Assembly (NCBI RefSeq): GCF_000143415.4
Contig: NW_003314285.1
Coordinates: 1,205,370-1,269,369 of the forward strand
DNA length: 64,000 nucleotides
Origin: Selaginella moellendorffii
Taxonomy: Eukaryota > Plantae > Lycopodiophyta
Direction of reading: 5' to 3'
Shown: positions 15,965-64,000 of the stretch, piece by piece
Position numbering within the stretch: the stretch's first letter is position 1
How the letters are laid out: the number at the start of each line of letters is the position of its first letter
The notes under the pieces: generated by a model
Databases searched by the model: none
What the model was told of the DNA's origin: nothing
The model's input: the letters and a program-made list of their open reading frames with translations, nothing else
Position numbers and translations under genes: made by a program

Positions 15965-16159
15965 ACATTCGCTACAAGTAAATCATAGTTTCTTGTGTTT
16001 CGACACATGCGTAAGCCTGTGCATGAAACATTATTAGTAACACAGCTGAGAATGATCTTCTCGCCAATATCAAATAAGCAAAAAACTGTATACCCGTCGC
16101 CAATACCAACAAAACTTGAAGCAGACCGAATCTTTGTACAGCTACGCCCTCCCCGAACT

Positions 16160-44857: not shown

Positions 44858-45801
44858 GACTGCAACAGTGGTGGACTTTGAGGCAGAGTGAACTCGAGCA
44901 ATCGGGGAGGCTTCCTGGGACACACAGCTGCTTTGTGATTAGGATCAGCACAGTAGAGGCAAAGATTATGAGATATTCGACGTTGCCTCTCAGCAGGACT
45001 CAACTTCCCTCTAATGAGTCGGGGAGTACCAGAAATATCCATCGGGACCGGAGCAGTAGGTTCAGGACTATGCCCCGAAGACTCAAGCTGGGATTCCTGA
45101 GTCTGGGACGGAAAAACAGCGGCGCGGCGACTTTCCTGACGACGTTCAAAGAGACGATTGTCACATCGAACAGCTTTGTTGATGGCGTCCGACAGGTCCT
45201 TGGGATCCTCCATGGTGAGCAACAAATCCTTGACACCGTTGTTGAGGCCGAAACGAAATTGGTCAATCAGAGCCCGCTCATCCCACTGAGTGTCCAAGGC
45301 AAGGAGTTGGAACTCTGCAGCGTAGATCGAGGCAGGACGAGACCCCTGAGAGAGACGTCTCATCTTTGTGGTAGCAGCCCGAACCCGATCCGTCTCGCCA
45401 AAACATGCTTCGAGCTTCTCTTTGAACAATTGAAGATCCATCAGCTCCGGAACCACGACCCCTTTCATGCTCTTTTCCAGAAGAGGAGAAAACCATGACA
45501 AAGCTGCACCCTCGAGCAACGTCCCAATCGCACCGATTTGAGACTCGGGAGTGGGGTACCGCCGATGTTGAAGTGCAAAGATCAGCTCCATTTGATTCAA
45601 AAATCCACGAAGCTCCGAACGCTTGCCTGAAAATTTCGCCGGGAAACTCACCTTCGGTTCAGGAACTTTGCTGGATCCTTGAGCCGAAAGTGAAGCAAGC
45701 TCCTGCTGCATGCGAAGAAGGGTCGCCTTCAGCTCGGTATTCTCAGACTGGATTTTTGCAAGGACTTCGGCAAAGAAATCAGGATGGCTTGGAGACTCCA
45801 T
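44830..45801 (-). CDS. gag: Retrotransposon Gag with CCHC zinc knuckle
   Basis: PAKFSGKRSELRGFLNQ, LLEGAALSWF, YAAEFQLLA and CLYCADPNHKAAVC. Confidence 0.93.
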   Translation of the reverse strand: MESPSHPDFFAEVLAKIQSENTELKATLLRMQQELASLSAQGSSKVPEPKVSFPAKFSGKRSELRGFLNQMELIFALQHRRYPTPESQIGAIGTLLEGAALSWFSPLLEKSMKGVVVPELMDLQLFKEKLEACFGETDRVRAATTKMRRLSQGSRPASIYAAEFQLLALDTQWDERALIDQFRFGLNNGVKDLLLTMEDPKDLSDAINKAVRCDNRLFERRQESRRAAVFPSQTQESQLESSGHSPEPTAPVPMDISGTPRLIRGKLSPAERQRRISHNLCLYCADPNHKAAVCPRKPPRLLEFTLPQSPPLLQSGNDPVQTE

Positions 45802-48800
45802 TGGCAAGAAGAAAGAAAAGAAAGGGGGGAAAAGACAAAGGCAATCAAATAATCAAAACAAGCTAAAAGAAAAGCAAAAAGCACAATCTGAATCAAACTG
45901 TCAAGACCCCCAACAAGATCAAGACTGGAAAATGCTAAAGACAAAGAGAAAAAGCTAGTGAAAACAAAGAAGAGGCCTTAGACTGGTGTTGATTCAGATT
46001 GTGGAGAAATGGAACAAGGCTAACCTATATATACTATAGGTTGATGAAGCTCCACCACTCTTGGATCGAGGACAGCCTAAATACAGCTGAGGTCGAGGAG
46101 GCGCCACATCATCATCAGGAATGTGGCTCGAGACTCAGGAATCGGGAAGTGTCTCGAGAGTCAGGAATAGGGAAGTGTCTCGAGAGTCAGGAATAGAGAA
46201 GTGTCTCGAGAGTCAGGAATGTGGTTTGCAGGTCAAGAATCCGGCGAGAGTCAGGAATGTGGCAAGAATTGGGGGATTCCTGACAACCACTGGGAGGTCC
46301 AAGGCTAGAGTGAATACAGACTGTCAGGTAGGGTAGCTTGGTGAAGTGTTCAAGAGTCGGCTCTAGTTCCCTCGAGAGATCGAATGGTCGATGCTCCCAG
46401 TCCAAGTGTGGGTAGCACTACCTACTTGGATACCTAGTGTGACTCAACGGAAACTCGCTTTAAGCCCATGGCTAGAGCACCCAAAGGCAAAAAGCGAGAA
46501 GAGTATCCACAAGGTTCGCATAAGGCCACGGTGTTCCGAAATATTGTCCTAAAATCCCAGACTGTAGGATGGAAAGGAGCAGTCCTCTAGTGTGGTGACC
46601 AAGGATACGGTCATGTGGTGAGAAAGTCCTAGAGGACAGTGGGACATAGTGGTCAGGCCAGTGGGCCTTGTCCCAGTGACAGTGTAGGCAAACTCAGCCA
46701 TAGACGGGAAAGGGACTTGGTGGGGATTGTAAAAGGGATATTGGGGAAGGCGGTTCCCCATGTGTGTGGGCATCTTAAGGATGCTAAGGAGTGGATCTTG
46801 GATGGTCATTCTTGGACAGATGGCCCACTCGTTGAGAGACGAGACTACGATGCATGGACCACCGATATGACCAAGGTGAAGGGGCATGGCCTTAGCATAA
46901 CAGGCTGGTATATCAGTGGTACTTGGGGTGTCAGTCTTGGGACCAGACATATGGAGCACTTGGACTAAGTGCAAAGGAGGAGTGGCATGAATGCCATTCT
47001 CGGGGCTAGCAAGTCCCAAGTCCTGAATTGGACTTAAGGAGGTTGTGAATGAGACTCCTCTAAATGGTCAGAGGTGTGGTTAAGTGATTAAAGTAGAATG
47101 GAAAAATTAGTCGCTTACAGTGGCAAATTATATTTTGCATTTCATTAAATTCTATGAGAGTAGTGAACTTTTATTAATCTTGACTTAGTCTTGGTAGCTT
47201 TGCACCCTAGCTGAAGATAGTGATGTCTAACTTAGTTGTTTGAAGTTGAGGTGTTAGTACCTATTCTATAGCTTTCTATATAAGGAGGCTGTGTACTAAT
47301 ATAAGTTCATCTTATGGTCTTCACTTTAGTTTCAACTAAGTGTTGGTCATGCATAACTAACCTCTTTAAGGCATGCTTAGAGTTGCTGGCTAGACATGTT
47401 GGTGAGCTTATTACAGCTTGATTAAATTTGAGTGGTCATTTAATTTGTGCTTGTCCATGAACCTTTATCCTATACTTAGGGTATTACTTTCATGTTGGAC
47501 AATTATATGATTTAATGACAAGAGTTAGTGTTTGGGTCTTGTGAAGGCGAGTTAACAAATGATTATTAATTGTTTTGCAACTAGTAATTGCTTATAGACT
47601 TTGTCAAAAATTGTTGAAATTTGCTTCACTTAATGATGATTTAGGAGTGATAGACTCACTTTACTGGATGGTGTTACAAAGGATCATATCATGGGCTTGC
47701 ATTTTTTTTCTTCATGTTAGCATGTGAATTCCATCTTTGTTGATATCATTTGGTTGCATTTAGTTTGTGGTGTTAGATTACATTGAGTTTTGGATATGGT
47801 GATTCACTCCTTAATGATGTGTTATTTATAGCTAAGTATTGCTAAAGAATTTGTCTTAGATACTAAGTAAGGTATTTTTAACTTTGGTTCACTTGGTTAT
47901 TAAAGAGTTTTGAGTAGTGATCCACTTATACTTTCTTTTAGCTTTGTTCTAGTGTTGATAGTATTGAAGTGATGCTCTATCATTTACATTGTTAAAATTA
48001 AAAGTAGAGTGAAATAAGAAGCTTCTAGATGTGTTAAAGAGAATATTGTGGGTTGTACCATGATTTTCTCTTTAGTATTGAAGTTAGTTTATGCAAGATT
48101 TGTAATCATTGTTAAGTGAGACTTGACCATAGACTTCTTCAAGCTTTTAGTTCTTTGAGTTTTGTGCTCATTGTTCTATTTATTAAAAGTTGTTAGAGAA
48201 GCATTTTAGCTCATTAGCTTTGATATTGAAATTAACTTTTGCATCTGGCAATCATTAGTGATGATTGATTATTATCTAGGATAGTTGATTATTCTTATTG
48301 AAGATTTTACCTAATTATTATTAATATAAAATAATTTACCATTCTTTAGGATGGTGGATTATTTCTTCAATGATGATTATGCATTTTTCTATTAATAAAA
48401 TGATTGATGATATTTCATGATAGTTGGTAATTTTCTTTAATAGCTTATGGCTTTTTGCATTACCACATATTCTTTATGGTTTACTTTGGATTGGTATCTT
48501 TGTTGTTGACATTTTCTTGAGCAACTCTGGTTCTTTAGTGTTATTGATCAGAATAGTGTAACTATTAGCATGAACAAGTATTTATTCACCTTTATAGCAT
48601 TTACTTTGTTTTGTTGATTGTTGCTAGAGGTTGGTTCTAATAGATTTGTTTGGGTGATACATTTGCAAGTATTTTGTTTACCAATCAATGATACTTTGTG
48701 TTCTTATAGTTGTCTTTCATAAGTTGTTTGGCATACTATCTACACTATTTAATAGTTAAGTTTTATCATTTAGTGTTTTTGATGGTACACTTACTATTGA

Positions 48801-50569
48801 TTTTTGTTAGATAGTGAATCTTATATTTTCCAATTATAATAGTTTTAGTGGTTTTTATACTATAATACTGGTTTATTGGATGATAACTTACTTGGAATAC
48901 TTTTGTGTTCTAATCTAAGATTTATTAACTAATACTTAAATCTCTAAGATATCATTGTCTTTGACTTTGATATTATCCATAGATTGATCTTTGGATTTGG
49001 GCTTATATAGGCAAACTAGCTTTGGCATTTTGTGTGCATGGTAAAATCTTTAGTACTGGGTTAGCTACTATCAAATTGTCACATCACCTGCCTCTCTCTT
49101 GATGTTCCTTATTCTATTAAAAAAGTGTGACTATGTAAAGAACTCTAATTGCTTTTTTACAAAAGTCTATCTAAACTTTACTGACATGTTTAGTTTCTTT
49201 GCTCATGAGGGTTGTGGCCTCTAGCTTTTCTCTTTGTACCACTTGCGAGTAGGGGCTTATCACTTTTTCGTAAACTGGGTGACACTTAGCGCAGCAAGGG
49301 TGGCAAAATCTATTGATCATTTCCTTATTGACAATGGCCAAAAAGTATTTGAGTTGGTAGCACATTTGTGTTAGATAAAGAGGTTATCCAAACTCATTTA
49401 AGTTGGTGCATTTCTCACAAAGTGTAAACACCACAAACGTTTTCTAAAGTTTTTTCCTTAGTGGTAGTCTAAACTAGAGTATGCATAAACGAGGATGCCA
49501 ATCTTCCTTAAGGGGGGAAGAGTGTCACGAATATGACTATGGGTATCAAAAATTGCTTGTCGGTTAATCCTTTTGGATATTCTTTCCTAACCACGACAGT
49601 AGGAGGTCAGTATTACTGGATCTTTTATCAATCTTCACCTAAGCTAGTTGAGAAACTAGTCATCACATATGCACTTAGATTAGAAGGGCACTAAGGAAAG
49701 AAATCCTAAGTTATTATTTAGTCAAACATATTTGATATAGTGATGAAAAATTCATGTTGTTGACTTACATTTGCTAGTGTTGGGAACCCCTATGATATTG
49801 AGTTTGATCCCTTAATATTTGCTAAATGATAGCTTACCATATTTGCTAAACACACTCACTATCATGCCCCTTGTGTTGGTATTGTTTGGTTCCATTGATT
49901 ATTTATGGAAAGTATCTAGATTTGTTAATTTGACATATCTACAGAATGTAAAGATTGTTATGAACACAATGGTGTTGGTTTTGTATCCAAATTCACAATC
50001 CAATGCTATTCCATATTTAGTAAATTTCAAGCTTATTCTAGAGACTAACTCTTGGTACTAAGGTTGGATAAAAGTGAAAGCTCAAAGTATGCATTCCTCA
50101 AGGGAAAGGGGGGCATTATAGTGGGTCCCAAATGTATAGTAGGGATAATAATGGGTAAGTTAGGCATGGCTGACTAACTTAAGGCATAGTTTAGCTCTTA
50201 CTTCCTTGTTTTGCATTTGGCTTAAGTTTAAGCCTAAATTCCATACCATACAGATGGAATACCCATATCCTTAGGTTATGCTACCGATATGTTGAAATAA
50301 CACTAGACTCCATTTGATTCTATTTTCCATGCTAGTTTTGGCATTAGGATGCTAGAAGCTTTAGGACTGTTCTAACATCACTCCATGCTCTTGTCCCCTT
50401 GCTCCTTGGGTTGAATGCTCAAGAGTAATTCCATGCTTTAGTTCTTTTACTCCTTGATTACAAACTTGGGAGTTTGGCTCTATACCTTTATTCAATGGCC
50501 CAAGGCCATGAAACTTACGTTCCACTCCATTGTTCTTGGACGTGTGGCATATAGAAGGTTTAGGTTTAT

Positions 50570-53500
50570 GATTTGTTGATGATTTTGCCCAAAAGCCATT
50601 CCATATTCATGAGTCATTACAAACTAATAAAGGGGTTAGAGTTGATTATAATTAACTTGAACTTTAGCAAGTAGTTTATATGATACAGCTTGAAAGGGAT
50701 GTTGACTTTTGGGGCTAAAGAAATTGATTTATAGAGAAAAGTGGCTATTATGCTTCTTTAAAAATATGATCCTTATGCCTTTCTTCATTAGTGTTATACT
50801 TGGTAGCAAGTTGTATTTTGCATTTTGTTAAATTTTATAAGAGTAATAAGCTCTCACTAATCTTGATTTAGTCTTGGTGGTTCTCTACCTTAGCTAAGGA
50901 TTGTGATATCTAATTTAGTTGTTTAAGGTTGAGATGTTAATACTTAAACTGTAGTTTTATCTATTAAGAAGTTGTGTACTACATGAGTCCATTTTATAGT
51001 CTTCACTTTAGTTTTAGCTAAGTGTCAATCATGCATAGTTAGCCTTTTTTATTATACTCAAAGTTGTTGCCTAGACATATTAGTAAGTTTATTGCTATCC
51101 AATTAGATTTAAGTAGTTATTATTCATACTTGTCCATATTATTATATATTGTACCTATGGTGTTACTTTCTTGTTGGACAAGTATATCACATGATGATGT
51201 GAGTTTAGTGTTTGAGTCTTATAAATGTGATATGTGACCAACACCATATTGTTTAGGACAAGCTCTACATTCTATAGATATTCCATAGTGATTACTAATT
51301 GCTTTGTGACTAGTGATTGCTTATAAACTTTTTCAAAAATTGTTGGCACTTGCTTCACTTAATGATGATTTAACAATTATAGACTTATTTACCAAATGAT
51401 ATTGCGAAGGATTGTGTTCTTAAGATTTCATGATTTTTCCATATTAACATATTGGTTCTATCTTTGTTCATATTATCTAGTTGCATTTAGTTTGTGGTAT
51501 TGGATTGCAATGATATGTTATTTATAATTAAATATTGTTGAAGGATTAGTATTTTAGACCTTGATTAACTTAGTTGCTAAAAGAGTTTTAAGTGGTGGTT
51601 CACTTTTTCTTTCTCTAGCTTTATGGCATTCAAATGATGCTATGATATTAACATTATTAAAGTTCAGATTAGAATGAGATAGGATATTTCTTCATGGGTA
51701 TATTGTGAAAGTTTGACTTTCAAATAGTTAGTGTTTAGGTCTTATTGGAGATTAACATTTTATTCCACTAGTCTCAATGATAATTGTGTTGATAGTTTGG
51801 CTATACCTTTATATTATTGATATTTGTGCATTTGCTAATTAAAAAATATATTGATATTCAAACAAACTAAGTGGCAAGTTGGATTAGTTATATTTTAAAC
51901 AAGTTTATTTACTAAGGGTTGAGCTTTAACTTTTCCTTAAAGAGTGATTTAATCATGGACTATACTAGCTTTGCAAAAGGAAAAGTTAAGGATCGATCAA
52001 AGTTGTGGATCTTTATTGGATTTGAGTTGAGATAATATTGATTATTGATGATTCTTTTTATGTTCATTATGAAGTAAGTTACCTCTTGCTATAGACAAAA
52101 TATTGATTTAACGACCATTTATTAAGTATAATTTTGTTATGTTTGGCTTTTGGATTGATATATATGCTCTTCATTAACTTTTATATTATAAATTTTAGCT
52201 TGTAGATATGTTAAGCAGGATATTGTGGATTGTACTATGATTTCTTTTTTAGCATTGAAGTTAATTTATACGAGACTCATGATCATTGCTAAATAAGACT
52301 TACCTATAAAATTATTTAAGCTTTAATTCTTTGAATTCTTGTACTCAATTTTTTAATTGTTAAAAAGTTGTCAAAGAAGGCATTTTGGCTCATTAGTCCT
52401 GCTTATGAAGTTGGTTTATCCATCTGGTAATCATTGATGATGATTAACTGTCATTTATGATAGTTGATTATCCTTATTAAAGGTCCTACTTGATTATTAT
52501 TACTATTGGATGATTTATCATTCTTTGGGATAATAGATTCTTCTTTAATAATGATTGTGCATCTCTATTGAGGGGATGATTAACAATCTTTTATGATAGT
52601 TAATTGTTATCTTAATAGCTTTTGGTTTTCTACATTACTACATATTCTTTATGGTTTATTTTAGTTTGGTATTTTAGGTTAGAGATATCAGAAGGATGTT
52701 ACTAATACTTACTTTAGCAACTTTGGTTCCATAATTTTGTTGATTGAGATTTATTCAAATTGGCTGGAGTGATAGTTAGTATGAATGAGTATTTATTGGC
52801 CTTCTAACATTTATTTTATTCTATAGATTATTACTAAAGTTGGTTCTAATAGATTAGGATGTTATTTCCTTTAGGTAATATATTCACGAGAAATTTTTTA
52901 TCCAATTAATGATATTTTATATTTTTTTAGTTATCTTTTATAAGTGATTTGGCATGTTATCTGCACTCTTTGGTAATTAAATTTTATCATTGAGCTTTCT
53001 TGATGATATACTTGCTATTAAATATTATTAGATGATTAATCTTATATCTTGAAACTATAGTGATCTTGGTGGTTTTTATACTATACTGGTTTATCAAATA
53101 ATAACTTAATTAGAAAAATCTTATGTTTTAATATAATATTTATTCAATGATAATTTGATATTTTTATCTATGACTTTAATATTATCCATCTATTGACCTT
53201 TGGATTTGGGTTAATATAGGCAAATTAGTTTTAGCACTTTATGTGCATGGTGAAGTCTTTAATCATGGGGTAACTACTATTAATTAGTCATATCACCCAC
53301 CTCTCTCGATGTTAAAAGTGTGTAACTGCATAAACAACTTTTATTACCTATTTACAATAGTCTATTTAAACCTTACCAATAGATTTATTTTGTTTACTTA
53401 TGAGGGTTGGGCCTCTAACTTCTCTTTCTATGTCACTTGCAAGCAAAAGTATATCATCTTTTGTAATTTGGGCAATACTAAGAGTAGCAAAGGTGGTTGA

Positions 53501-53600
53501 TTCTATTGGTTATTTCCTTATCAGTGATGGTTAAAAGGTGTTTAAGTAGTAATGCATTTGTGTTAAATAGAAATGTTTCCATCTAATTCATTTAAGTTGA
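50570..53600 (+). mobile_element. Further decayed copy of the family-B internal region
   Basis: Repeats the sequence of 38500-38750 plus 47125-49410, without the nested insertions. Confidence 0.7.
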
Positions 53601-55610
53601 TGTATTACACAAATCCCTATGTCCCAAAATAGAGTCAAATATAAGTTATATGACAATTGCTAAGGCAAAAATCTAACAAATGTAATACATTGGACCAAAA
53701 GCTCTAACTTGGAAAATCAAGTGCAAAAGTGGAACTTCCAAAGAAGTGCTCAAGTAATAAGTACAAAGTGATCAGTAAACAAGTCTTTAGAAAGGGATAA
53801 AAGAATGACTAACACATAGCAAGTGTCATAACATATGGAAGTGTTAAGATCGAGACTAAAATGAAGTCCAAGATTAGGTACAAGACTAAGTTTAAGATTA
53901 AGTTCAAGACTGAGTTCAATTTCAAGTTTCAAGTTGAGACCAAATTTGTGATTGAGACCAAATCCAAATCTGAGTTCAAGGATGAAAGCCCAAAGTGATC
54001 ATCTGATAAGTTCCTAGAGATAGAAAGGGGGAGAACTTTAGGGGAACTAGTGTGTCTAGGAAAGACTAATATAATTAAGGAAAGCTATAATTATATGGTG
54101 GGTGATGATATGAACACTTAAAAGTCTACGAATAAAGTAAGCATGAATGGATAAATGAAGTGACTTGATGAAGTGTTCAAGAATTAGCTTTAGCTCTTCT
54201 AGGAGATTGAATGGTCAATGCTCCCTAAGTGTGGGTGGTATTACTTATTTGGATACTTTGTATAGCTCATTAAAACCTCACTCTAGCCACATAGTTGAGA
54301 CATCTTTGTGGTAAAAGATGGGGTAGTACCTACATTAAGCTCTAATGTTTTGAAATGTCATCCCAAAGTAACTAACAATGAAAACAAAAAAGAGTAGCCT
54401 TTTTGCTTAGTAATCAAATGTATGGTTATATAGTGTAGGAAGTCCTAAATGTTAATAAGACTTAGTGGTCAAACCTTCAAGCCCTAACCTAATGGCAACG
54501 AGGGTGAACATTGTTGTGGATGAAGTAGGGATTGAAAAAGGGATATTAAAGGATATTGTTCCCTAGCAATATTGTTTCCTAAGAATGCTAAGGAATGGTT
54601 ATAAAATAACCACTTGTGATTGAAAGGTATAGTTTTAGAAAGATAAGACTATGGCATAAAGTTACTAATAAAATATTGAGCCTTACTATAAGAAGTTAAG
54701 ACTTCAATAGTACTTTTGGGTGTCTAAAGTGGGATTGAATATATAACACACTTGGAATAAGTGAAAAGTCGACATGGGCTTGAGATTACCTATGAAAGTT
54801 AACAAGTACCCTAAGTTGGGATGAGAACCTATAAAAGTTGTGAATGTGACTCCTTTAAATGGTTTAAGGTGTGATTAAGTGACTAAAGTATAATGAAAAC
54901 TTTAATCATTTACAATTGATTTTAACTCCTTTGAAAGATTGGATGGTTTATGTTCCCAATCCAAATATAAGTGGCACTACCTATTTAGATACTTTGTGTT
55001 AGTCACCAGAACCTCATTCTAACCATATAGCCAAAGCACTCTAGTGGCAAAAAGTGGGGAGAGTACCTCAGGACTCATGATATTTCGAAATATCATCTTA
55101 AAACCTTAAATGGCAAAAAGGAAGAAGAGTGGTCCTTTTGCTTAGTAACCAAGGGTATGGTTATATGATAAGGAAATTCTAAAGGTCAATAGGGTTTAGT
55201 GGACAATCTTTCAAACTCTAAACTATTGACGAGCACTACCATAAATAAAGAGGGATTTGTTGGGGATTAAAGAAAGGATATTGAAAGATAATATTCCCCC
55301 ATGTTTTAGGGCATTCTAAAGATGCTAAGAAGTGGTTATAAAATGACCATAGTTAGAATGGATGGCTTAGTTTTGGAGAGACAGGTATGTGGTATAAATG
55401 GTTTTGAATTACATTTGAGACAATGTGAATGGATAAAGCTTTAGAGGCTAAGATACCTTTAAATGTGTTTAATAGCCTTAAACATATAGAACATTTAGAG
55501 AAGTGTGAAGGCAACATTTTAGAGACCACCTTTAGGGTTTTGGTTATGAGTGAAACTTTTTCAAGTGGTCAAAAGTGTAGTTAAGCAATGAAAGTAGAAT
55601 GGAAAGTTTA
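53601..55610. mobile_element. Strongly AT-eroded family-A LTR (53601-54914) followed by a second partial copy
   Basis: TGTATTACACAAATCCCTA...ATCATTTACA; collinear with 28164-30030. Confidence 0.7.
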
Positions 55611-56454
55611 AGAATTAGGGAAAAAAACATAGGTGAAAGCAAATCCAAATTGGGCAAATGTAAGAAGTGATACATTCAAGAAGATATCTCATAAGATCAA
55701 GTGAAGATCATCAGTAATAAAGTATAATAGGGTTAGCATGCCACCTCCCTATCCCCCTTAGAGAATCTTATGTTTATATAGGATTTAGAGACTAAAGAAG
55801 ATCTCATAGCCTACTAGTGGTAACACAACTTGTGTGAGGGCTATCTAGTGGCAACACTAGCTTTAAGACTTTAATTTTCAATATAAATGTGTACTCCCTT
55901 ATGTTTCTCTTGGAAAGTCTCATAGCAATAGCTTCTAGGTGCATAGGGATTATTCCCAAAAGTTTCCCCATGATCTACATGTTCTAAAGTGCTTTAGAGT
56001 GCTGGGTGCAAAGATCTCTCATAGGCCCATAAATGCCTGCAGTAGAAATATCTAAAATAGAGAACTAGTGATTGGAGTAGTAATTCAAAAAACAAACAAA
56101 AAATGTATAGAGCAATGAAGTAAGGTGAGAGCTTTGGAGGAAGTTGCTAACTGGCACCATATAGCCCTATGGGGACAAGTTCGTCTATTCCACTTTGTTG
56201 AATGGCACATGCCAAGCATTAGAAATAACACACCTTACTTTAGCTACACTCTATTTTTGTAGCTTTTGTAACATATTGTTATATAAGGAGCAAGCTAGGT
56301 GAATAGCCATGGTTATTTTGGCTTTAGCAACATATAAGACATTATATTCTTCTTAGTTTTTGGACTATTGCATCCATCCTAGATGGTTCAAGTTTAATTG
56401 GATTGAAAATATATATACATACAATTTTATTCGTTTTATTAACAAATATTGAAA

Positions 56455-57447
56455 ATGAATGCTTTTCTAGTTTATGCTTTATTTGTGCTTTATATTTTAC
56501 CAGATCAAATTTATTCATGTACTCTCGATTCACAATGTCCTAGTGGTTATAGATGTAAGAAATATATTTGCAAAAGAACATGTTTTCCAGGTGATTTTTA
56601 AATTTTTTATCTTAGATTTAAGTAATTTTTCAACAGGTGATGCAGTATTACAACTTTATAATGGAAATAAAAAACAAATGAAAAATATTTCTATAGGAGA
56701 TAAGGTTTTTATTTAAAATCATTTTCATCTTTTTGTATATAACATTAAATTTTAAGTTCTTTTCTAGGTTGCAGTTCGAACTAAAAATGGTGAAATACAT
56801 TATTCTGATATATATGCTTTTGGGCATCAAGATTATGATGCTTATGAAAATTTTATTCATATTGATATTGAAAATAATAAAAGCATTGAATTATCCCCTT
56901 TTCACTTTATACCAATAGTATCAAAAACAGGTAATAGTATTATGATGAAAATCTTAAATTACTCAATTATATTTTAGGCTCAATCATCTATAAATATGCT
57001 AATGATATTACTAAAAATGATTTATTACTATCTCTAGATGAAAAATTAGGAAAAGTTTTAACTTATAATATAACTGGTAAGTGATATAAATAAATAGTTT
57101 AACTCACTATTTTTATTTTTATAGGTTTTTATACTTTAAAAAAGCATGGACTGTATAACCCATTCACACTATTTGGGGATTTAATTGTTAATGATATTAT
57201 TGTATCACCTCATAGTGATTGGTTTTTAGATGATTTATTTAATTTTTTTAAGTTAAGTTACATATTACCTTATGTATATCATATTATCTTATTTCCTATT
57301 CAAGTTATATACATGAATTTAAATTTTAAAATTTATCTTTATTTATATAAATATTTTACAAGAAACATATTAATGATTAACCATATCATTGAAGTGGGAA
57401 TATTATGGACATTTATCTATAAAATAAAATGTTTTATTAAAGAATAA
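56455..57447 (+). CDS. Secreted Hog-domain (Hedgehog-type Hint + sterol-recognition-like region) protein, 262 aa; exons 56455-56590, 56637-56704, 56768-56930, 56978-57076, 57125-57447
   Basis: Four GT-AG introns of 46-63 bp splice to a stop-free 789-nt frame: MNAFLVYALFVLYILPDQIYS-CTLDSQCPSGYRCKKYICKRT-CFPGDAVLQLYNGNKKQMKNISIGDKVAV..YSDIYAFGHQD..IELSPFHFI..YANDITKNDLL..GLYNPFTLFGDLIVNDIIVSPHSDWF..YHIILFPIQVIY..*. Confidence 0.92.
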
Positions 57448-57622
57448 TATTTTGGCATAAGAATACTCAAACTATTATGAATAAATTTAACTATATTAAA
57501 ATTTTATCACTTTGAATAAAAATAATTAAAATTCAAGATTTAAATACTTAATCCATATTTTTAGGGCAAGAGTTTCTTTTAGTTCCAAAAATGTAGTTAT
57601 CTAACTAACCATTTTGTTGGAG

Positions 57623-58952
57623 ATGGTGTTGCCGGCTGCAATCGTGTGCCTATTCTTCGTGGTCCTTGTGCTTGCCATTTGCAACCAACAAGGACACCCA
57701 GTGCTCTTCCCGGTTGTGGCCAACACAAGAGCAGCGAGCTCGGTCAGAAAAGCAGCACTCCCAAGAGATCAACACACCGGTAGTGATTTGGATCAACAAG
57801 CTCACCTAGAGGACGACTTCTTCTCACTTGCCCCGGACATCAGTGAGAATAGTCACACTCACTTCCCAGCAGTAGCAGGCAAGAACGTTGATCGTGAGCG
57901 TCAGGATCGAGTGACACCATCAACACCATTAACAGCACCACCATCTCCAATGCTAGCAGTAACACCATCGCCACTCCTATCGCCTGCGTGGGAAGGAAAC
58001 CATCCCACTAGCAACTTCTCCTGGAAGCAAGACAATGACGATGGCGACAATCAGACATCTCTCGAGTCCACCCTCACGTCGGCATCCATGGAGAACAAGA
58101 CCATCCTCGTCACCGAGCTCAACAAAGCATGGGCCGTGGGGGGAATGTTCGACTTGTTTTTGCGCAGCTTCCACACCGGCGAAGGAATCCTCCACCTCTT
58201 GGATCACCTCCTCGTTGCCACGCTCGACCGGGAGGCATCCGCCGTGTGCAAATCCAAGCGCCTTCATTGCTTCCGCCTGAAAACCCCCAGGCTGGATCTC
58301 TCCACGGAGAACAATTACAACACCCCAAACTATCTCGAGACCAACAAGCTCAAGATCCAGTTCCTGGGCAATGTTCTCAAGCTTGGATTCAACTTCCTCT
58401 ACACAGTAAGAGAGAGATATTCTTCGATCTTTGTTCCACCACCTTTCTCCTTGACGTGCACAGGACGCTGATATACTCTGGTTTCGCGCTCCATTCCAGC
58501 ACTTCTCGCGAGAATCCGACCTCGACGTCTCTTGCAACCACGATTTCAATGGAAACTCGTCCGACATTGCGAACCACATCAACACGGGCATCCTCCATGT
58601 TCGATCAAACCAGCGGACCATCAAGCTCTTCGACCTGTGGTTCGAGCAGCAGGAAACTTCCCCGGACAAGAACGACCAGGACGTGTTCGAGGCCATGAAA
58701 GAGACGCCTGATTTTGCCAGCATTGGATTGAAGCTCAAGTACATCCCAACCGAGTACTTGAGCGGCTACTGCCACATGAACACCGACTTTGAGAAGATTT
58801 GCGCCATTCACGCCATCTGCTGCATTAGTCAGGAAGTAAAGCTCGCCGCTCTCAAGCAATCTCTAGAAGATTGGCTCCTGTACAAAACCATCACTCCCCA
58901 GGAGAGTAGAGAGATTGATTTCCAATTTACCGTCCCAGAGTGCTCGATGTAG
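57623..58952 (+). CDS. Nucleotide-diphospho-sugar transferase family protein (GT77-like, At4g15970-like); exons 57623-58405 and 58464-58952
   Basis: Type II TM anchor. ASMENKTILVTELNKAW, DLFLRSFHTGEG, LGFNFLYT|DADILWFRAPF (DxD motif), NTGI, DQDVF and HAICC. Confidence 0.9.
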
Positions 58953-59225
58953 ATAGCAGCTGCGATGAAAAAAAAGAGAGACTGTTCTCGATCTAAATTT
59001 ACGAAAGCACTCACCTGTGTAGCCTTTCGTGATTGCAAACGAAAAGCAAAAGGTCTACCTCAAACCTCCGGCATGGCAACAGTTAAAACTGGTCTCGTTT
59101 ATATAAGAAAATGTAGCATGCAGTTGGCATTTCTTTCGCAAGATCCTGCCAAACAGAACAATTCAGTCAAGGTTTCAAAACCAAGAACGCAATGAATTCG
59201 TGGGAGAAGAAATCCACCTTGAGAC

Positions 59226-60257
59226 TTATTTGTTGCAAAACTCCCGACTAGAAACGTTGGTGCCATCTACGAGAGGAACGCGTTGATCCGGACGAAGAAT
59301 GCTCCAGTTGGGAGAAGCTGCAGCTCGAAGCCACCGGAAGTCGTCAACTTTCTCCCACAATCCAGTCTCCTCGGCCAAGTTCGCTGCCTTGAGATGATCC
59401 TCAATCCCTTGGTAGTGGAAAGCGTAGGGAGCAAACCGGACTCCACTAACATGCTCCACGATCGGGCGACTCCGGACCCGGAGATAAAAATCCGTGTTGG
59501 TGGTGGAGTGGATTCTAATCTGGTGGGACGCGAGCATGAAAATGCAGCTGTCGATCTCCTCCAGAAGAATGGATCCCGTGACTGCGCTCACGTAGACATG
59601 GCAGTTCTTGAGCTTGTGGAAGAACATGGCGCGGAAGATCCCCCTCAAGAACACCGTGCAGTGCGTCAAGTTGGAGAGCGTCACCTCTGTCTCGCTGGAT
59701 TCACCCGAGTCGTGGACGATGGTGGAGTTCTTGGCGTCGCGAATGGAGTGGAGCTTGGCAGCTCGATCAGCCATGAACGATGGAGTCTCATCTTCTTCTT
59801 CCTCGTTTTTCACCGCTGGTGGCGTTACCGTTTCTTTCGGTGACGAGGAAGAGTTCTTGGCCCGGAAGGAGAATTTCTTCTTGGGGATGACCTCCGCGAT
59901 GGCGCTCTCGAGCGATTGCTTGAGCCTGTCCACCACCGATCGAGAGCTCTGGACGTCGTAAGGCGGGAGGAAGTAGCTCGCATCCGACACCATCTTGTCC
60001 ATGGCCGCGAGCTGGACCGCGACGGCATCCATGTCGGCCTTGCCGGATGCGCTGCCGGACTGGCGGATGCGACTGAGCGATTCCTCCACGACCTTGCGCT
60101 GCTCGTCGAAGGCGCCCTGGAACGCACCTGTGGATTCCAGTGGATTCGCGGATGCCGCTGCGTCGTGGCGCCGGGCCTCCGCCTGGCGCGCCCGCTCGCT
60201 GTCCAGCGCCGCCAATCGCTCCAGCATTGCAGCATAGCGCCCATCCTTGGCCTCCAT
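59226..60257 (-). CDS. TFCC: Tubulin-folding cofactor C
   Basis: SYFLPPYD, PKKKFSF, ASHQIRIH, YLRVRSRPIVE, FAPY and VDDFRWLRAAASPNW. Confidence 0.95.
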   Translation of the reverse strand: MEAKDGRYAAMLERLAALDSERARQAEARRHDAAASANPLESTGAFQGAFDEQRKVVEESLSRIRQSGSASGKADMDAVAVQLAAMDKMVSDASYFLPPYDVQSSRSVVDRLKQSLESAIAEVIPKKKFSFRAKNSSSSPKETVTPPAVKNEEEEDETPSFMADRAAKLHSIRDAKNSTIVHDSGESSETEVTLSNLTHCTVFLRGIFRAMFFHKLKNCHVYVSAVTGSILLEEIDSCIFMLASHQIRIHSTTNTDFYLRVRSRPIVEHVSGVRFAPYAFHYQGIEDHLKAANLAEETGLWEKVDDFRWLRAAASPNWSILRPDQRVPLVDGTNVSSREFCNK

Positions 60258-60396
60258 CGCTAGGGTATTTGCTAGTTTGCTAGAGTGAAACTAGGAGATG
60301 GATTGGAATTCCAGGGCCATCGCGGAGATGGATCGCGATTCCAGGTATTGCGTGAAATCCAGCTGCTAGACAGCGAGCTAGAATGCGTCGCCAAGA

Positions 60397-62529
60397 ATGG
60401 CCGGGGTGGGAGGAACAGGAAATTCATCCAAGAACAGGGAGATAGTTGTGAGGTTCCAAGACGCTGGATCCAAGCCCAGCGTGGCGCTCATCCTCGCGGC
60501 TCTCAAGGCATGTAGCAAATCCAGGAATGAGAAACTGGGTAGAGAGATCCACGCCGCGGCTCGCGAGAGTGGATTCATGGCGAATTCTTTCGTGGCGAGC
60601 TCTCTCATCGACATGTACGCCAAGTGTGGGAGGATGGCCGACGCGAGCAGTGTCTTCCACGGGATGGAGATCCACAGCATTGTCTCGTGGAATTCCCTCA
60701 TCCTTGGCTACGCCGAGAATCACCAGCCAGAGAGAGCGCTCCACCTCTACGATCGAATGCTGCGAGAGGAAAGCCTGGCTCCAAATCACGTCACGGATCT
60801 CGCTGCTCTCAAGGCCTGCGTGGTTCTCGCCAGGGAAGAAGACGCGCAGATCATCCATGGCCAGCCAGTGAAGATGAAAACTCTGGAGATAGTGATGAGG
60901 ATCCACTCTCGAGCTGCTAGAGCTGGATCAAGCGGGCAAGAAGAACTCCACATCTTCCTCGCCAACTTTTTGGTGGACGTTTACTCGAGGTGTGGCAGCG
61001 CGGGTGATTCTCGACGAGTTTTCGATGCGATCCAACACCGCAGTGTGGTTTCATGGACCTCGATGATTCTCGGCTATGCTGACAACCATCGCGGAGAGCT
61101 GGGCTTGGAGCTCTTCGAAGAGATGCGTCGCGCCGGCTGCTCGCAAAACCAAGTAACTTTTATCGCTGCGTTGAAAGCCTGCTCGAGCATGGCGGAGAGA
61201 GATCCCGGCGCGCTCGTCCACGGCAAGCTTGTCAAGCTCCAGGCCTTGGAAACTGGGATGAGTCTCCACTCTCGAGCCCAAGCAGCGGGACTTTGCAAGG
61301 ACTCGGTGGTGGCCAACACTTTGATCGACATGTACGCGAAGTGTGGAAGCATGGAGGATTCACGCAGAGTTTTCGACGCCATGCCGAGGAAGTGTGTCAT
61401 CTCCTGGACCGGGATGATCATGGGGTATGCTCTAAACGGTGACGGCGAGGTAGCTCTCGAGTTCGTCCGGCAAATGGACGATCATCACTGCCAGTCGAAT
61501 TACGTCACAGTTCTCGCTGCGATCAAGGCCTGTGTGTCTTTGGCGGAGAATGAGGCCGGGACGATGATCTTGGGCAGGATGGTGAAGACGAGTTCGTTGG
61601 AGATCGGACGAACTCTACACCGGCAAGCTCGAGAAAACGGTCACGAGAAAGAGATCTTCGTTGCCAACGCTCTCATCGACATGTACTCCAAGTGTGGCAG
61701 CCTCGAGGACGCGTTTAAGATGTTTTGGAGCATCCGTAGGCGAGACTCGGTGTCTTGGAGCTCGATCATCCAGGCCTGTGCTGACAATGGCGAGGACGAG
61801 CAAGCGCTCCATCTCTTTTCGACGATCCAGCGCGAGAAGAGAGTTGTGAGCCCCGCGATCTTTGTGGCGGCTCTAAAGTCCTGTGGAAATCTGGGAGCTC
61901 TCGAACGCGGAAGAACTCTCGAGCTAGAAATCACAAACGCGGGCCTCGCGAGAAATCCCATGGTGGCAAACTCTCTCGTTGGGGTGTACGGTCGGTGTGG
62001 CAGTACGGCCGACGCCCAGCGAGTGTTCGACTCCCTTCCGCCCCAATGCCGCGACCTGGTGACGTGGAATGCCCTCGTGGACGCGTACGGCCGCCACGGC
62101 GACACGGCCCAAGTAATGTCCATGTTTCACGCGATGCAGCACAGCCACGACCGTACGCTGTGGCCCAATTCCGTAACTTTCTTGCTTGCCTTGAGCGCTT
62201 GCTGCCATGCTGGCCTTGTGGACGAGGGCAAGACGCTCCTGGCCGCGATGATTCAAGAGAATCGAGTGATTCCGTCGATCAAGCACTATACCTGCGTGAT
62301 CGACCTGTTGGGCCGAGCTAATCGCTTGGAGGAGGCCGTGGAATTGGTGGAGCGATTGCCCTTCGAAGCGGATGCGGTGATCTGGACGTGTTTGATGGAT
62401 GCCGCGCACAAATTTGGGGATGATGGCGTTGGGAGGAGAGCATTTGATGCCGTGGCGAAGCTGGAGGCGCGATCGGCAACGTACGTGATGATGTCCAACA
62501 TCGTAGGAGCGGCAGCGCAAGAGCCCTAA
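60397..62529 (+). CDS. PLS-class PPR protein with a short E-type end, no DYW
   Basis: Repeated SLIDMYAKCG / VSWNSLI / AALKAC triplets; terminal HYTCVIDLLGRA..WTCLM..TYVMMSN. Confidence 0.95.
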   Translation: MAGVGGTGNSSKNREIVVRFQDAGSKPSVALILAALKACSKSRNEKLGREIHAAARESGFMANSFVASSLIDMYAKCGRMADASSVFHGMEIHSIVSWNSLILGYAENHQPERALHLYDRMLREESLAPNHVTDLAALKACVVLAREEDAQIIHGQPVKMKTLEIVMRIHSRAARAGSSGQEELHIFLANFLVDVYSRCGSAGDSRRVFDAIQHRSVVSWTSMILGYADNHRGELGLELFEEMRRAGCSQNQVTFIAALKACSSMAERDPGALVHGKLVKLQALETGMSLHSRAQAAGLCKDSVVANTLIDMYAKCGSMEDSRRVFDAMPRKCVISWTGMIMGYALNGDGEVALEFVRQMDDHHCQSNYVTVLAAIKACVSLAENEAGTMILGRMVKTSSLEIGRTLHRQARENGHEKEIFVANALIDMYSKCGSLEDAFKMFWSIRRRDSVSWSSIIQACADNGEDEQALHLFSTIQREKRVVSPAIFVAALKSCGNLGALERGRTLELEITNAGLARNPMVANSLVGVYGRCGSTADAQRVFDSLPPQCRDLVTWNALVDAYGRHGDTAQVMSMFHAMQHSHDRTLWPNSVTFLLALSACCHAGLVDEGKTLLAAMIQENRVIPSIKHYTCVIDLLGRANRLEEAVELVERLPFEADAVIWTCLMDAAHKFGDDGVGRRAFDAVAKLEARSATYVMMSNIVGAAAQEP

Positions 62530-62644
62530 ACAAGCTCTGTTTTTCCCGCTCGGGTTTGAATTTTAGGGTGGATATTCTGGCCGTTAGATTGGAGGGGATC
62601 CAAGGGTGATAACATCCCAGGGTTTTAGAAGCGTCTAGAGAGAA

Positions 62645-63854
62645 ATGGCTGCAGCTATGGCGCCCTCGTCGTTGATCGCCGCGAGGTCTTCCGCAATTCA
62701 GCTCAACGCGCCTTCTACTTCCACAAAAGTAAGCATTTTTATTGATTTCTCGCTCTTTGGCTTCTGGAGCATTCATAGATCTACTTTTTCTTGATTTTAC
62801 TGAGCTACATTCTATAAACTATGCTAGAAATCAAAAATTTTGTTCTCTTTGTTTGCTAATTCTTAGAGTTTTTCGTTTCCTTTCCTGATAAAATCGGATT
62901 TTTTCAGCTTATCTCGAGGAGCTGGACAGGCCTTCACATGGAAGCCGGAAGTTCATTGTCTGTGACAATTTCATCGCCCCACGCTACGAGGATAAGGAGT
63001 GGTTCTGTCCAAGTTAGAGCAGGAGTTACCGCAACAGCACCATCAAAGGTAAGAGAATTTGTCAAAACTTCCTCTCTTTTTTAATTCCTTTGGGGTTTTG
63101 CAGTTCAAGACTCTAAAACCTCTTGGAGATCGAGTGCTTGTCAAGATCCAAAAAGCAAATGAAACGACACCAGGTGGAATTTTACTGCCAGTGACATCAC
63201 AAACCAAGCCTCAGGGTGGAGAAGTTGTAGCAGTCGGATCAGGCAAGACCATTGCCGACAAGAAAATCGATCCTTGTGTCTCGGTAAAAAATGTTTTCGT
63301 TGGTGTTGCTGGTTTGTAACTTTGATCACAGATTGGTGACATGGTTGTCTACTCCAAGTACGCTGGAACCGAGGTCCAATTCGATGATGCCGAGCACGTC
63401 TTGCTCAAGGAGGACGACCTCATTGGTTTCTTGTCGACCGACGATATCAAAGACTTGAAGCCACTCAACGAGAGAGTCTTGATCAAGGTATGGAAGAACT
63501 TTTGGTATTTAAACCGCTAGAGCCTTTTTCTGTTCCTTCTTTACAGATAGCAGAGGCCGAGGACAAGACGTCCGGAGGTATCATCCTCACCGAAAATGCC
63601 AAAGAGAAGCCCGTCACTGGCACGGTACCAAACTGTCGTTTATCTTCTAGCTGGGGATTGATGCGAGCTTGTGTGTTTAGGCTGTCGCCGTTGGATCTGG
63701 AGCTTTCGGAGAGGATGGGGTGAAAAAGCCGCTAGATATTGCTCCAGGGAACTCGGTCATGTATTCCAAGTATGCTGGAAACGAGTTTAAGAGCAAAGAC
63801 GGGAGCGAGTATGTTGTGATCCGTGCATCGGACATTCTCGCAGTTTTGCCATAG
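62645..63854 (+). CDS. CPN20: Chloroplast 20 kDa co-chaperonin (tandem GroES domains), multi-exon
   Basis: Transit-peptide-like N-terminus. [37 protein letters not shown], then a second domain [38 protein letters not shown]. Confidence 0.93.
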
Positions 63855-64000
63855 CTAGCTCCCAAGGATTGAAACAAAAACCAATCAATTTTATTCTGGG
63901 AAAAAAAACAACTAGAATCAAGAGGTAAAAGTCTTGTTCCATTTACAACGATGCTAGATCTTCGTCTACGTAAATACACCCGAAACAGTAGCAAACTAGG

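What the first reader, a model, noticed from the sequence alone, without database searches (positions are those of the whole stretch)
56455..57447. Hidden intact Hedgehog-like (Hog/Hint) autoprocessing gene in a land plant
Seen: five short, very AT-rich exons with canonical introns splice to an uninterrupted 262-aa protein: signal peptide, tiny N-terminal domain, Hint, hydrophobic tail. The ORF track shows only a fragment of exon 2. The motifs match Hedgehog C-terminal domains in order: CFPG, MxxLxxGDxV-like (MKNISIGDKV), SxVxxFxH/D-like (SDIYAFGHQD), L[T/S]xxH, AxxVxxGD-like (ANDITKND), GxYxPxTxxGxIxVN (GLYNPFTLFGDLIVN) and an amphipathic HxxxxP segment typical of the sterol-recognition region. 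Established: Hog domains cleave themselves at Cys1 by an N-S acyl shift and, in Hedgehog, ligate cholesterol to the released N-terminal part. As I recall, Hog genes are unknown from flowering plants and were noted only sporadically in algae, protists and non-seed plants, without a function. Inference: this is the precursor of a self-processing, possibly phytosterol-anchored secreted peptide.
Basis: partly seen in the sequence, partly recalled or inferred. Interest (0 to 1): 0.96.

Follow-up and report, generated by a model that had tools for sequence, protein, structure and literature searches.

The report
Unannotated AT-rich spikemoss Hog gene
This is a real, intact but unannotated and apparently silent spikemoss (Selaginella moellendorffii) gene that joins a tiny four-cysteine secreted peptide to a Hedgehog-type self-cleaving domain. 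It is one more, unusually AT-rich, copy of a plant gene family first reported in 2008 whose function is still unknown.

Summary
Five exons (56455-57447, +) with four GT..AG introns of 46-63 nt splice to a 262-aa ORF. It encodes a signal peptide, a 21-residue cationic 4-Cys peptide, a Hint domain starting at Cys43, and a conserved helical C-terminal region.

The window is S. moellendorffii scaffold GL377589.1, and no gene is called at this locus. The spliced protein aligns colinearly over residues 43-230 with Pfam-Hint proteins of mosses, liverworts, lycophytes and ferns (up to 172 bits). It shares three of its four intron positions and phases with an annotated Selaginella Hog gene. It is therefore a vertical paralogue, not a foreign insert.

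Catalytic audit: Cys1, the S/TxxH motif and a His at the Hedgehog D46 position are present. Hedgehog's essential Cys143 is Pro, Gly-1 is Thr, and homology to the sterol-recognition region is not detectable.

Purifying selection is clear (omega 0.11-0.22 in Hint). However, three RNA-seq runs gave zero reads, the DNA carries a methylation-decay signature (GC3 12%, CpG o/e 0.17), and the allele on the other haplotype has lost its start codon and signal peptide.

Plant Hog genes were published in 2008 (PMC2362128) and paralogues are annotated. This scan has already noted similar AT-rich copies elsewhere in this genome. Verdict: new member of a known kind. Sterol anchoring remains speculation.

The parts
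56410..56417 (+). TATA-like box (TATATATA), 38-45 nt upstream of the ATG; putative promoter element
   Evidence: Read from the sequence; inference only. It lies inside the 144-bp segment missing from the other haplotype.
56379..56522 (+). Segment deleted in the allele on haplotype scaffold GL377634.1. It contains the TATA-like box, the ATG and codons 1-23.
   Evidence: blastn gives window 56309-56378 = L003 13850-13781 and window 56523-57572 = L003 13779-12708. Paralogue HogB keeps this segment, so the deletion is derived.
56455..56590 (+). Exon 1: signal peptide (residues 1-21, 56455-56517), 4-Cys cargo peptide (residues 22-42, 56518-56580), Cys43 codon (56581-56583), and the start of the CFPG motif
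   Evidence: The N-terminal 19-residue Kyte-Doolittle mean is 1.5. The cargo has net charge +4 and four Cys.
56591..56636 (+). Intron 1 (46 nt, GT..AG, phase 1, in the Gly codon of CFPG)
   Evidence: Same position and phase as intron 1 of the annotated Selaginella Hog P0154.
56637..56704 (+). Exon 2 (residues 46-68), ending in the IGDK motif
56705..56767 (+). Intron 2 (63 nt, GT..AG, phase 0)
   Evidence: Same position and phase as in P0154.
56768..56930 (+). Exon 3 (residues 69-123). Holds His88 (56825-56827, the Hedgehog D46 position), Ser111 (56894-56896) and His114 (56903-56905), which form the S/TxxH motif.
   Evidence: Pfam Hint positions 44-88, E 2e-4. Ungapped alignment to Drosophila Hh-C residues 30-76 in PDB 6TYY and 1AT0.
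56931..56977 (+). Intron 3 (47 nt, GT..AG, phase 1); absent from P0154
56978..57076 (+). Exon 4 (residues 123-156)
57077..57124 (+). Intron 4 (48 nt, GT..AG, phase 1)
   Evidence: Same position and phase as intron 3 of P0154.
57125..57447 (+). Exon 5 (residues 156-262 plus stop). Holds the end of the Hint domain (GLYNPFTLFGDLIVN), Pro184 (57208-57210) at the Hedgehog Cys143 position, and then the conserved helical C-terminal region (~57220-57444).
   Evidence: Pfam Hint positions 135-162, E 1.6e-3. 240 relatives at E<1e-3 in 1.84 billion representatives. Column audit.
57480..57485 (+). AATAAA, a possible polyadenylation signal 33 nt after the stop codon
   Evidence: Read from the sequence; inference only.

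Best explanation
The stretch is an intact, unannotated paralogue ('HogA') of the land-plant Hog family in Selaginella moellendorffii. Selection maintained it until at least recently, and it is probably expressed only in a narrow tissue or condition.

The precursor has three parts: a cleavable signal peptide (residues 1-21), a 21-residue cationic peptide with two probable disulfides (residues 22-42), and a Hedgehog-type Hint domain followed by a plant-conserved helical C-terminal region (residues 43-262).

Inferred mechanism: in the secretory pathway, Cys43 attacks the Thr42 carbonyl in an N-to-S acyl shift, helped by Ser111 and His114. This forms a thioester, which a second nucleophile resolves to release the mini-peptide. 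Whether that nucleophile is water or a lipid or sterol hydroxyl activated by His88 is unknown. I put self-cleavage at about 0.6-0.7 and sterol or lipid transfer at about 0.15-0.2.

Shown here: gene structure, family membership, residue inventory, purifying selection and lack of annotation. Inferred: secretion, cleavage and the fate of the peptide.
For: - The five-exon ORF is intact, with a chance probability of about 1e-11.
- The window is identical to GL377589.1 of GCA_000143415.2, and no gene is called at the locus.
- blastp of the spliced protein covers residues 43-230 colinearly: Ceratodon P0011 (172 bits), Diphasiastrum P0004 (41% identity), and S. moellendorffii P0022 and P0154 (40% and 35%). 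All of these are Pfam Hint positives at E 1e-25 to 1e-28.
- The exon 3 and exon 5 pieces hit Pfam Hint colinearly.
- A profile of the plant family matches Drosophila Hh-C structures at E 1e-27. An AlphaFold model of paralogue P0022 superposes on 6TYY and 1AT0 with TM 0.8.
- Cys43, His88, Ser111 and His114 occupy the C1, D46, T69 and H72 positions. D46H Hedgehog still autoprocesses (PMC12054796).
- Purifying selection: omega is 0.22 for Hint against paralogue HogB (p=2e-7) and 0.11 against the other-haplotype allele (p=2e-5). Exons are 95.7% identical with no indels, while introns are 88% identical with 28 gap positions.
- Introns 1, 2 and 4 share position and phase with the annotated gene P0154.
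- In the tree, HogA and HogB fall within the land-plant Hog group.
- The G-[FY]-x-C-x4-C cargo motif is shared with annotated Selaginella and moss Hogs.
Against: - Three RNA-seq runs gave no read on 55500-58313 (about 9.2 million records read from each), while the neighbouring TBCC gene was covered at depth 2-20 with spliced reads. About 20 further transcriptome contig sets of this species hold none of the stretch's words.
- GC3 is 12% and CpG o/e is 0.17, like the surrounding CpG-depleted AT-rich blocks. Neighbouring genes have GC3 ~70% and CpG o/e ~1. This is the signature of long-term germline methylation.
- The allele on the other haplotype lacks the promoter-proximal DNA, the ATG and the signal peptide, so the gene is individually dispensable.
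- Cys143, essential in Hedgehog, is Pro184, and residue -1 is Thr rather than Gly.
- The C-terminal region does not align to the Hedgehog SRR.
- No whole-protein Pfam or structure run was possible for the spliced protein itself.
Confidence: 0.6

Rival explanations
1. It is a silenced relic on its way to becoming a pseudogene. The ORF is still open, but the gene sits in methylated, transposon-rich chromatin, is no longer transcribed, and will decay like its neighbouring copies.
For: - Zero reads in three RNA-seq runs while the neighbour is expressed.
- The gene shares the CpG depletion and 22% GC of the 10-kb AT-rich block it lies in.
- The other haplotype's allele carries a 144-bp deletion of the start.
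- Decayed Hog fragments lie nearby: L001 14981-15181, L003 3350-4886.
- Earlier scan notes report dead copies in the same cluster.
Against: - omega of 0.11-0.22 in Hint, with no indel or stop in 239 shared codons, despite dS of 0.13-0.41. Introns in the same DNA accumulated indels.
- In 22%-GC DNA an unconstrained ORF would acquire stops quickly (stop probability 0.09 per codon).
- AT-richness predates the HogA/HogB split, yet both kept ORFs of 262 codons.
- Only one study's samples were read.
Confidence: 0.33
2. It is foreign DNA: a contaminant or a horizontally acquired gene from an AT-rich eukaryote with short introns, such as a nematode or a protist.
For: The gene has 22% GC against ~55% in flanking genes. 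The introns are very short (46-63 nt) with T-rich acceptor ends. The closest database protein is only ~40% identical.
Against: - The locus is present, syntenic and diverged on both haplotype scaffolds, next to the same TBCC and PPR genes.
- Three introns share position and phase with a GC-normal Selaginella Hog, whose own introns are 49-65 nt.
- The tree places it among lycophyte, fern, moss and liverwort Hogs.
- The composition matches the host's own CpG-depleted AT-rich blocks elsewhere in the window.
Confidence: 0.03
3. It self-cleaves but is not a lipid transferase. The Hog module simply releases the peptide by hydrolysis, or it is itself the functional membrane-associated product. This rivals only the sterol-anchor part of the reading.
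For: - Cys143, which carries the branched thioester attacked by cholesterol in Hedgehog, is absent. C143A and C143D abolish Hedgehog processing (column audit).
- No detectable homology to the Hedgehog SRR beyond Pfam position ~162 of 213, or beyond chain residue 401 of 6TD6.
Against: A ~75-residue C-terminal region is conserved across land-plant Hogs and is confidently predicted as helical in paralogue P0022. Its omega is 0.23-0.46. It occupies the place of the SRR, and His at the general-base position is invariant in all 74 relatives examined. Burglin reports SRR motif K in moss Hogs.
Confidence: 0.45

Closest known systems
Land-plant Hog proteins: pSm, pSl and pPp Hog of Burglin 2008 (PMC2362128). 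Also the annotated S. moellendorffii paralogues XP_002985754.2 ('indian hedgehog B protein', P0154), XP_024535844.1 ('warthog protein 4', P0022) and 'warthog protein 6' (P0173).
   Same: - Same species and family.
- Same architecture: signal peptide, short Cys-rich upstream module with G-[FY]-x-C-x4-C, CFPG cleavage motif, Hint domain, conserved helical C-terminal region.
- His at the D46 position and no Cys in motif J.
- Three shared intron positions and phases.

   Different: - Only 35-40% protein identity.
- 22% GC with GC3 of 12%, against 43.5% GC for P0154.
- An extra intron.
- An ~11-residue deletion in the C-terminal region.
- Thr instead of Gly, Ala or Ser before the catalytic Cys.
- No gene model and no detected transcript.

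Hedgehog C-terminal autoprocessing domain (Drosophila Hh-C, PDB 1AT0; D46H mutant, 6TYY)
   Same: Hint fold family. Cys1-Phe2 start, ungapped alignment over Hh-C residues 1-76, the TxxH-type motif, and the GxxxPxTxxGxIxVN motif. The natural His88 equals the engineered, still active D46H variant.
   Different: No Hedge signalling domain; the cargo is 21 residues. Cys143 is Pro, Gly-1 is Thr, and the SRR is not alignable. No evidence of sterol transfer or of any receptor pathway.
Nematode Hog proteins (warthog, groundhog, quahog), described in PMC2362128 and PMC1636047
   Same: A Hog domain fused to non-Hedge, Cys-containing secreted N-terminal domains, in multigene families.
   Different: Different cargo domains. 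RefSeq's 'warthog' names for the Selaginella proteins are automatic similarity labels, not orthology. HogA groups with plant sequences. I did not compare it directly with nematode sequences.
Inteins and bacterial intein-like (BIL) domains
   Same: Shared Hint fold and the first N-S acyl-shift step. They are second-tier structural matches for the plant paralogue model.
   Different: No C-extein and no C+1 nucleophile, and sequence similarity is far lower (10-20% identity). The domain is C-terminal, so it can cleave but cannot splice.

Membership tests
Hog/Hint autoprocessing domain (Pfam PF01079) | Significant sequence match to the Hint profile | tested here: met
   The exon 3 piece scores 21.5 bits (profile positions 44-88) and the exon 5 piece 18.5 bits (positions 135-162). 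The two hits are colinear, and their rough sum of 40 bits exceeds the 29.7-bit cut-off. The whole spliced protein scores 120-172 bits by blastp against proteins that pass PF01079 at 1e-25 to 1e-28. The whole spliced protein could not be submitted to Pfam because it has no reference.
Hog/Hint autoprocessing domain (Pfam PF01079) | Nucleophilic Cys as first residue of the domain (CF motif) | tested here: met
   Cys43-Phe44 in CFPG. This column is Cys in 67 of 74 relatives and a gap in the other 7.
Hog/Hint autoprocessing domain (Pfam PF01079) | TxxH motif (T69/H72 of Hh-C) | tested here: met
   Ser111-Pro-Phe-His114. His is invariant, and Ser occurs at this position in 28 of 74 relatives.
Hog/Hint autoprocessing domain (Pfam PF01079) | Hint fold | tested here: met
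   Tested by proxy only. The AlphaFold model of paralogue P0022 (40% identical, pLDDT >90 over the Hint part) matches 6TYY and 1AT0 with TM 0.80-0.81. HogA itself could not be folded because it has no reference.
Hog/Hint autoprocessing domain (Pfam PF01079) | Self-cleavage at the residue-1/Cys1 bond | not testable with these tools
   This needs a biochemical assay with a C43A control.
Hedgehog-type cholesterolysis (Hh-C mechanism) | General base Asp46 | tested here: inconclusive
   The residue is His88, as in all 73 relatives that have a residue in this column. Engineered D46H Hedgehog still autoprocesses (PMC12054796 Fig. 1C), and PDB 6TYY is the best structural and sequence match.
Hedgehog-type cholesterolysis (Hh-C mechanism) | Cys143 (branched thioester intermediate; essential in Hh) | tested here: not met
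   Pro184 aligns with Cys143. Only 9 of 74 relatives have Cys there. C143A and C143D abolish Hedgehog processing. Burglin also noted loss of this Cys in moss Hogs.
Hedgehog-type cholesterolysis (Hh-C mechanism) | Gly at position -1 | tested here: not met
   Thr42 in HogA and Lys in HogB. Most plant Hogs in the alignment have Gly there, and some have Ala or Ser.
Hedgehog-type cholesterolysis (Hh-C mechanism) | Sterol-recognition region homologous to that of Hedgehog | tested here: inconclusive
   Pfam matches of plant Hogs stop at profile position ~162 of 213. The plant profile aligns to full-length Hedgehog only up to chain residue 401 of 471. A conserved helical region does occupy the same place, and motif K was reported in moss Hogs.
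Hedgehog proper (Hedge + Hog) | N-terminal Hedge signalling domain | tested here: not met
   Only 21 residues lie between the signal peptide and Cys43, and no Hedge hit was found.
Land-plant Hog family (Burglin 2008) | Phylogenetic grouping with bryophyte, lycophyte and fern Hogs | tested here: met
   HogA and HogB fall within the group holding Diphasiastrum, Adiantum, Marchantia, Ceratodon and the S. moellendorffii clade. Support is moderate (SH-aLRT 85), the branch is long and the composition is biased.
Land-plant Hog family (Burglin 2008) | Shared gene structure with a Selaginella Hog | tested here: met
   Introns 1, 2 and 4 have the same codon position and phase as the three introns of P0154.
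WAP four-disulfide core (PF00095), for the cargo peptide | Eight-Cys core domain scoring above the curated cut-off | tested here: not met
   The score is 21.1 bits against a 20.8-bit cut-off, but the match covers only profile positions 15-39 of 41 and includes the Hint Cys43. The cargo has four Cys, not eight. I treat it as a generic small Cys-rich resemblance.

The most novel reading that the evidence does not exclude
The AT-rich mini-Hog subfamily produces a C-terminally sterol- or lipid-esterified cationic two-disulfide peptide of about 21 residues. This would be made by a Cys143-independent, His-based variant of Hedgehog chemistry. It would be the first autocatalytically lipidated secreted peptide in plants, acting as a signal or antimicrobial, and expressed only in an unsampled stage such as reproductive tissue, gametophyte or infection.
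Probability: 0.12. Interest if true: 0.8.

Novelty: new member of a known kind. Interest (0 to 1): 0.3.

Why it matters
No plant Hog protein has a known function. If any of them is active, it would show whether Hedgehog-style self-cleavage and lipid transfer operates outside animals, as Burglin proposed in 2008 for an ancestral 'Ur-Hog'.

This copy adds three modest points:
- Gene finders miss an entire AT-rich, CpG-depleted subfamily in Selaginella.
- The subfamily is under purifying selection even though its composition looks heterochromatic.
- Its cargo is reduced to a 21-residue cationic 4-Cys peptide, which makes it a compact substrate for a biochemical test of plant Hog chemistry without Cys143.

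It does not reveal a new kind of system.

Tried and rejected
- **The search for homologous proteins with the exon 5 piece:** no candidate. The tool's length filter (58-185 aa) makes this blank uninformative about full-length proteins.
- **PDB sequence search with the exon 5 piece:** nothing.
- **Exact look-up of P0019:** not on record. P0154 was used instead.
- **Exact look-ups of the PPR and TBCC neighbours:** these returned only this scaffold. The other haplotype was reached through cluster members.
- **Whole-protein Pfam, structure prediction, atlas and exact look-up for the spliced 262-aa protein:** not run, because a spliced sequence has no reference and long letters must not be typed. 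Instead, exon pieces were used by reference and the spliced protein was analysed locally (blastp, MAFFT, IQ-TREE, Nei-Gojobori) in run_python.
- **Foreign origin or contamination:** rejected.
- **Chance ORF:** rejected.
- **WAP-domain identity of the cargo:** rejected as marginal and partial.
- **A second in-window Hog copy:** none found by tblastn.
- **A shuffling simulation:** timed out and was replaced by an analytic estimate.
- **The claim in earlier notes that HogB's copy on this haplotype is dead:** could not be checked. It lies beyond the DNA I could fetch (L001 ends at window-equivalent 72529).

Full report
**Observation**

- They join to 789 nt, which is 262 codons plus TAA. The four introns are 46, 63, 47 and 48 nt, all GT..AG.
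- Exons have 20-29% GC and introns 16-17%.
- At this composition a stop codon is expected about every 11 codons. An open frame of 262 codons therefore has probability about 1e-11, and exon 5 alone about 4e-5.
- All quoted motifs are present, and the catalytic Cys is residue 43.

**Source and annotation status**

An exact look-up of the neighbouring PPR protein places the window on scaffold GL377589.1 of assembly GCA_000143415.2. The fetched locus is base-for-base identical to window 50397-64000.
- The allelic proteins on the second haplotype scaffold carry Selaginella moellendorffii names.
- The gene calls on record list a 223-aa gene, TBCC, PPR, Cpn10 and DUF308. Nothing is called at the Hog locus.
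- A full HMMER scan of 1.84 billion representatives with the exon 5 piece found 240 relatives at E<1e-3. None was more than about 50% identical, so no annotated version of this protein exists in that collection.
- 'Hidden' is therefore correct.

**What it is**

- The spliced protein aligns colinearly from Cys43 to about residue 230 with Hint-domain proteins. Examples are Ceratodon (172 bits), Diphasiastrum (41% identity), and S. moellendorffii 'warthog protein 4' (40%) and 'indian hedgehog B protein' (35%). All of these pass Pfam PF01079 at E 1e-25 to 1e-28.
- The exon 3 and exon 5 pieces hit PF01079 on their own, in colinear order.
- A profile of the plant family matches Drosophila Hedgehog C-domain structures at E 1e-27.
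- An AlphaFold model of paralogue P0022 superposes on PDB 6TYY and 1AT0 with TM 0.8, with inteins and BIL domains as the next tier.
- The tree places HogA and its sister HogB as a long-branch pair within the group that holds lycophyte, fern (Adiantum), liverwort (Marchantia), moss and Selaginella Hogs. Support is moderate.
- Introns 1, 2 and 4 have exactly the codon position and phase of the three introns of the GC-normal annotated gene P0154, whose own introns are also 49-65 nt.
- Together with synteny on both haplotypes, this rules out contamination or horizontal acquisition.

**Anatomy**

- Residues 1-21 form a hydrophobic signal-peptide-like segment.
- Residues 22-42 are a 21-residue peptide with four Cys and net charge +4. 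Its G-[FY]-x-C-x4-C motif recurs just before the cleavage site in annotated Selaginella and moss Hogs. The mini-cargo is therefore a trimmed version of the family's conserved upstream region (Burglin's Figure 14). The Pfam WAP hit is marginal and partial.
- Residues 43-187 are the Hint domain.
- Residues 188-262 are the plant-conserved C-terminal region (WFLD..F......LP..Y...L.P). This region is predicted as helices in the paralogue.

**Catalytic audit against Hedgehog**

The Hedgehog active site is C1, D46, T69, H72 and C143 (PMC12054796).
- Cys43 corresponds to C1, Ser111 to T69 and His114 to H72 (ungapped alignment).
- The D46 position is His88. It is His in every relative that has a residue in that column. 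The best PDB match is the D46H mutant, which still autoprocesses.
- C143 is Pro184 in HogA, and only 9 of 74 relatives have Cys there. In Hedgehog, C143A and C143D abolish processing.
- Residue -1 is Thr, not Gly.
- Neither Pfam nor the plant profile extends into the Hedgehog SRR.
- The first step (thioester formation) is therefore well supported by residues. The Hedgehog-specific second step is not.

**Evolution and state of the locus**

- On the other haplotype scaffold (GL377634.1, locus L003) the allele is 95.7% identical in exons with no indel. Introns are 88% identical with 28 gap positions. omega is 0.20 overall and 0.11 in Hint, p=2e-5.
- That allele also carries a clean 144-bp deletion (window 56379-56522). 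The deletion removes the TATA-like box, the ATG and codons 1-23.
- About 12 kb away on that haplotype, in the opposite orientation, lies a paralogue, HogB (L003 546-1565). It has five exons and 262 aa, is 70% identical to HogA, has 23% GC, and is annotated only as a 130-aa fragment.
- omega between HogA and HogB is 0.22 in Hint (p=2e-7), 0.46 in the C-terminal region, and about 1 in the cargo with all four Cys kept. The cargo estimate rests on few sites.
- Decayed Hog fragments lie between the two genes.
- The gene's composition (GC3 12%, CpG o/e 0.17) matches the window's other AT-rich blocks (CpG o/e 0.12-0.26). The GC-rich gene blocks have CpG o/e of about 0.7-1.0, and the neighbouring genes have GC3 ~70%. 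I read this as long-term cytosine methylation and deamination, not foreign origin.

**Expression**

- None of the roughly 20 transcriptome contig sets of this species holds the coding stretch.
- In three raw RNA-seq runs (about 9.2 million records read from each) no read lay on 55500-58313. TBCC, 1.8 kb downstream on the minus strand, was covered at depth 2-20 with spliced reads.
- One 168-nt low-depth contig of uncertain library type covers 57455-57622, just after the stop codon. It cannot be interpreted.
- All three raw-read runs come from a single study, so silence elsewhere is not shown.

**Interpretation**

- Best reading (0.6): a selection-maintained, narrowly expressed gene for a secreted precursor that cleaves itself at Thr42|Cys43.
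- Main rival (0.33): a recently silenced copy drifting towards pseudogene status, as its allele and neighbouring copies already show.
- Whether cleavage transfers the peptide to a sterol or lipid is open. I give it 0.15-0.2, because Cys143 and a recognisable SRR are missing, although the invariant His and the conserved helical region keep it possible.

**Novelty**

- Burglin (2008, PMC2362128) reported Hog genes in S. moellendorffii, S. lepidophylla and Physcomitrella. He noted their signal peptides, the conserved upstream region and the lost motif-J cysteine. [quoted passage not shown]
- A dozen or more S. moellendorffii paralogues are annotated.
- My literature searches found no functional study of plant Hogs.
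- Earlier notes of this scan describe several similar AT-rich 4-Cys Hog copies elsewhere in this genome. One follow-up reached the same conclusion on other DNA.
- This is a new, unannotated member of a known family.

**Limits**

The spliced protein has no reference. Whole-protein Pfam, structure prediction and exact look-ups were therefore replaced by exon-piece searches, local analyses and a paralogue model. The state of HogB on this haplotype was not verified.

Noticed in passing
window 21000-26000, 31000-39000, 47000-57600 versus 1-20000 and 57650-62700: The window is a mosaic. AT-rich blocks (27-35% GC) are strongly CpG-depleted (o/e 0.12-0.26). GC-rich gene blocks (~50-55% GC) have CpG o/e of about 0.9-1.0. 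GpC is normal in these blocks, so this looks like methylation-driven decay of repeat-rich DNA.
   Followed up: partly
window 57623-58952 (+): The annotated 223-aa gene just downstream of the Hog gene matches only the first third of a Nucleotid_trans (PF03407) domain. It had no RNA reads over its 5' part. Its 3' part is overlapped by minus-strand spliced reads (introns 58960-59014 and 59145-59216) that look like the TBCC 3' UTR. It is possibly a truncated or spurious model.
   Followed up: partly
window 39933-45000 (-): A Ty3/gypsy chromovirus-type LTR retrotransposon with long open frames (protease, RT, RNase H, integrase, chromodomain).
   Followed up: partly
L003 546-1565 (GL377634.1, other haplotype): Intact five-exon paralogue HogB (262 aa, 23% GC). 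It is annotated only as a 130-aa Hint fragment, so the AT-rich subfamily is systematically mis-annotated.
   Followed up: yes
L001 14981-15181 (window-equivalent 65377-65577); L003 3350-3656 and 4709-4886: Short, decayed Hog-like fragments between HogA and HogB on both haplotypes. These are remains of further copies in a local cluster.
   Followed up: partly
window 56523-57572 versus L003 13779-12708: Allelic divergence at this locus is high: dS is about 0.13 and overall identity 91% with many indels. That is unexpectedly high for two haplotypes of one individual, and may reflect a high mutation rate in methylated DNA or old haplotypes.
   Followed up: no
window 57455-57622: A 168-nt, low-depth contig from a run of uncertain type (possibly RNA) covers only the stretch between the Hog stop codon and the next gene's ATG. 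It has no coverage of either coding region.
   Followed up: no
alignment of 74 Hog relatives: Every non-gapped close relative recovered (mostly non-animal or metagenomic) has His at the Hedgehog Asp46 position, and most lack Cys143. The 'His-type, Cys143-less' Hog appears to be a widespread natural variant whose chemistry has not been studied.
   Followed up: partly
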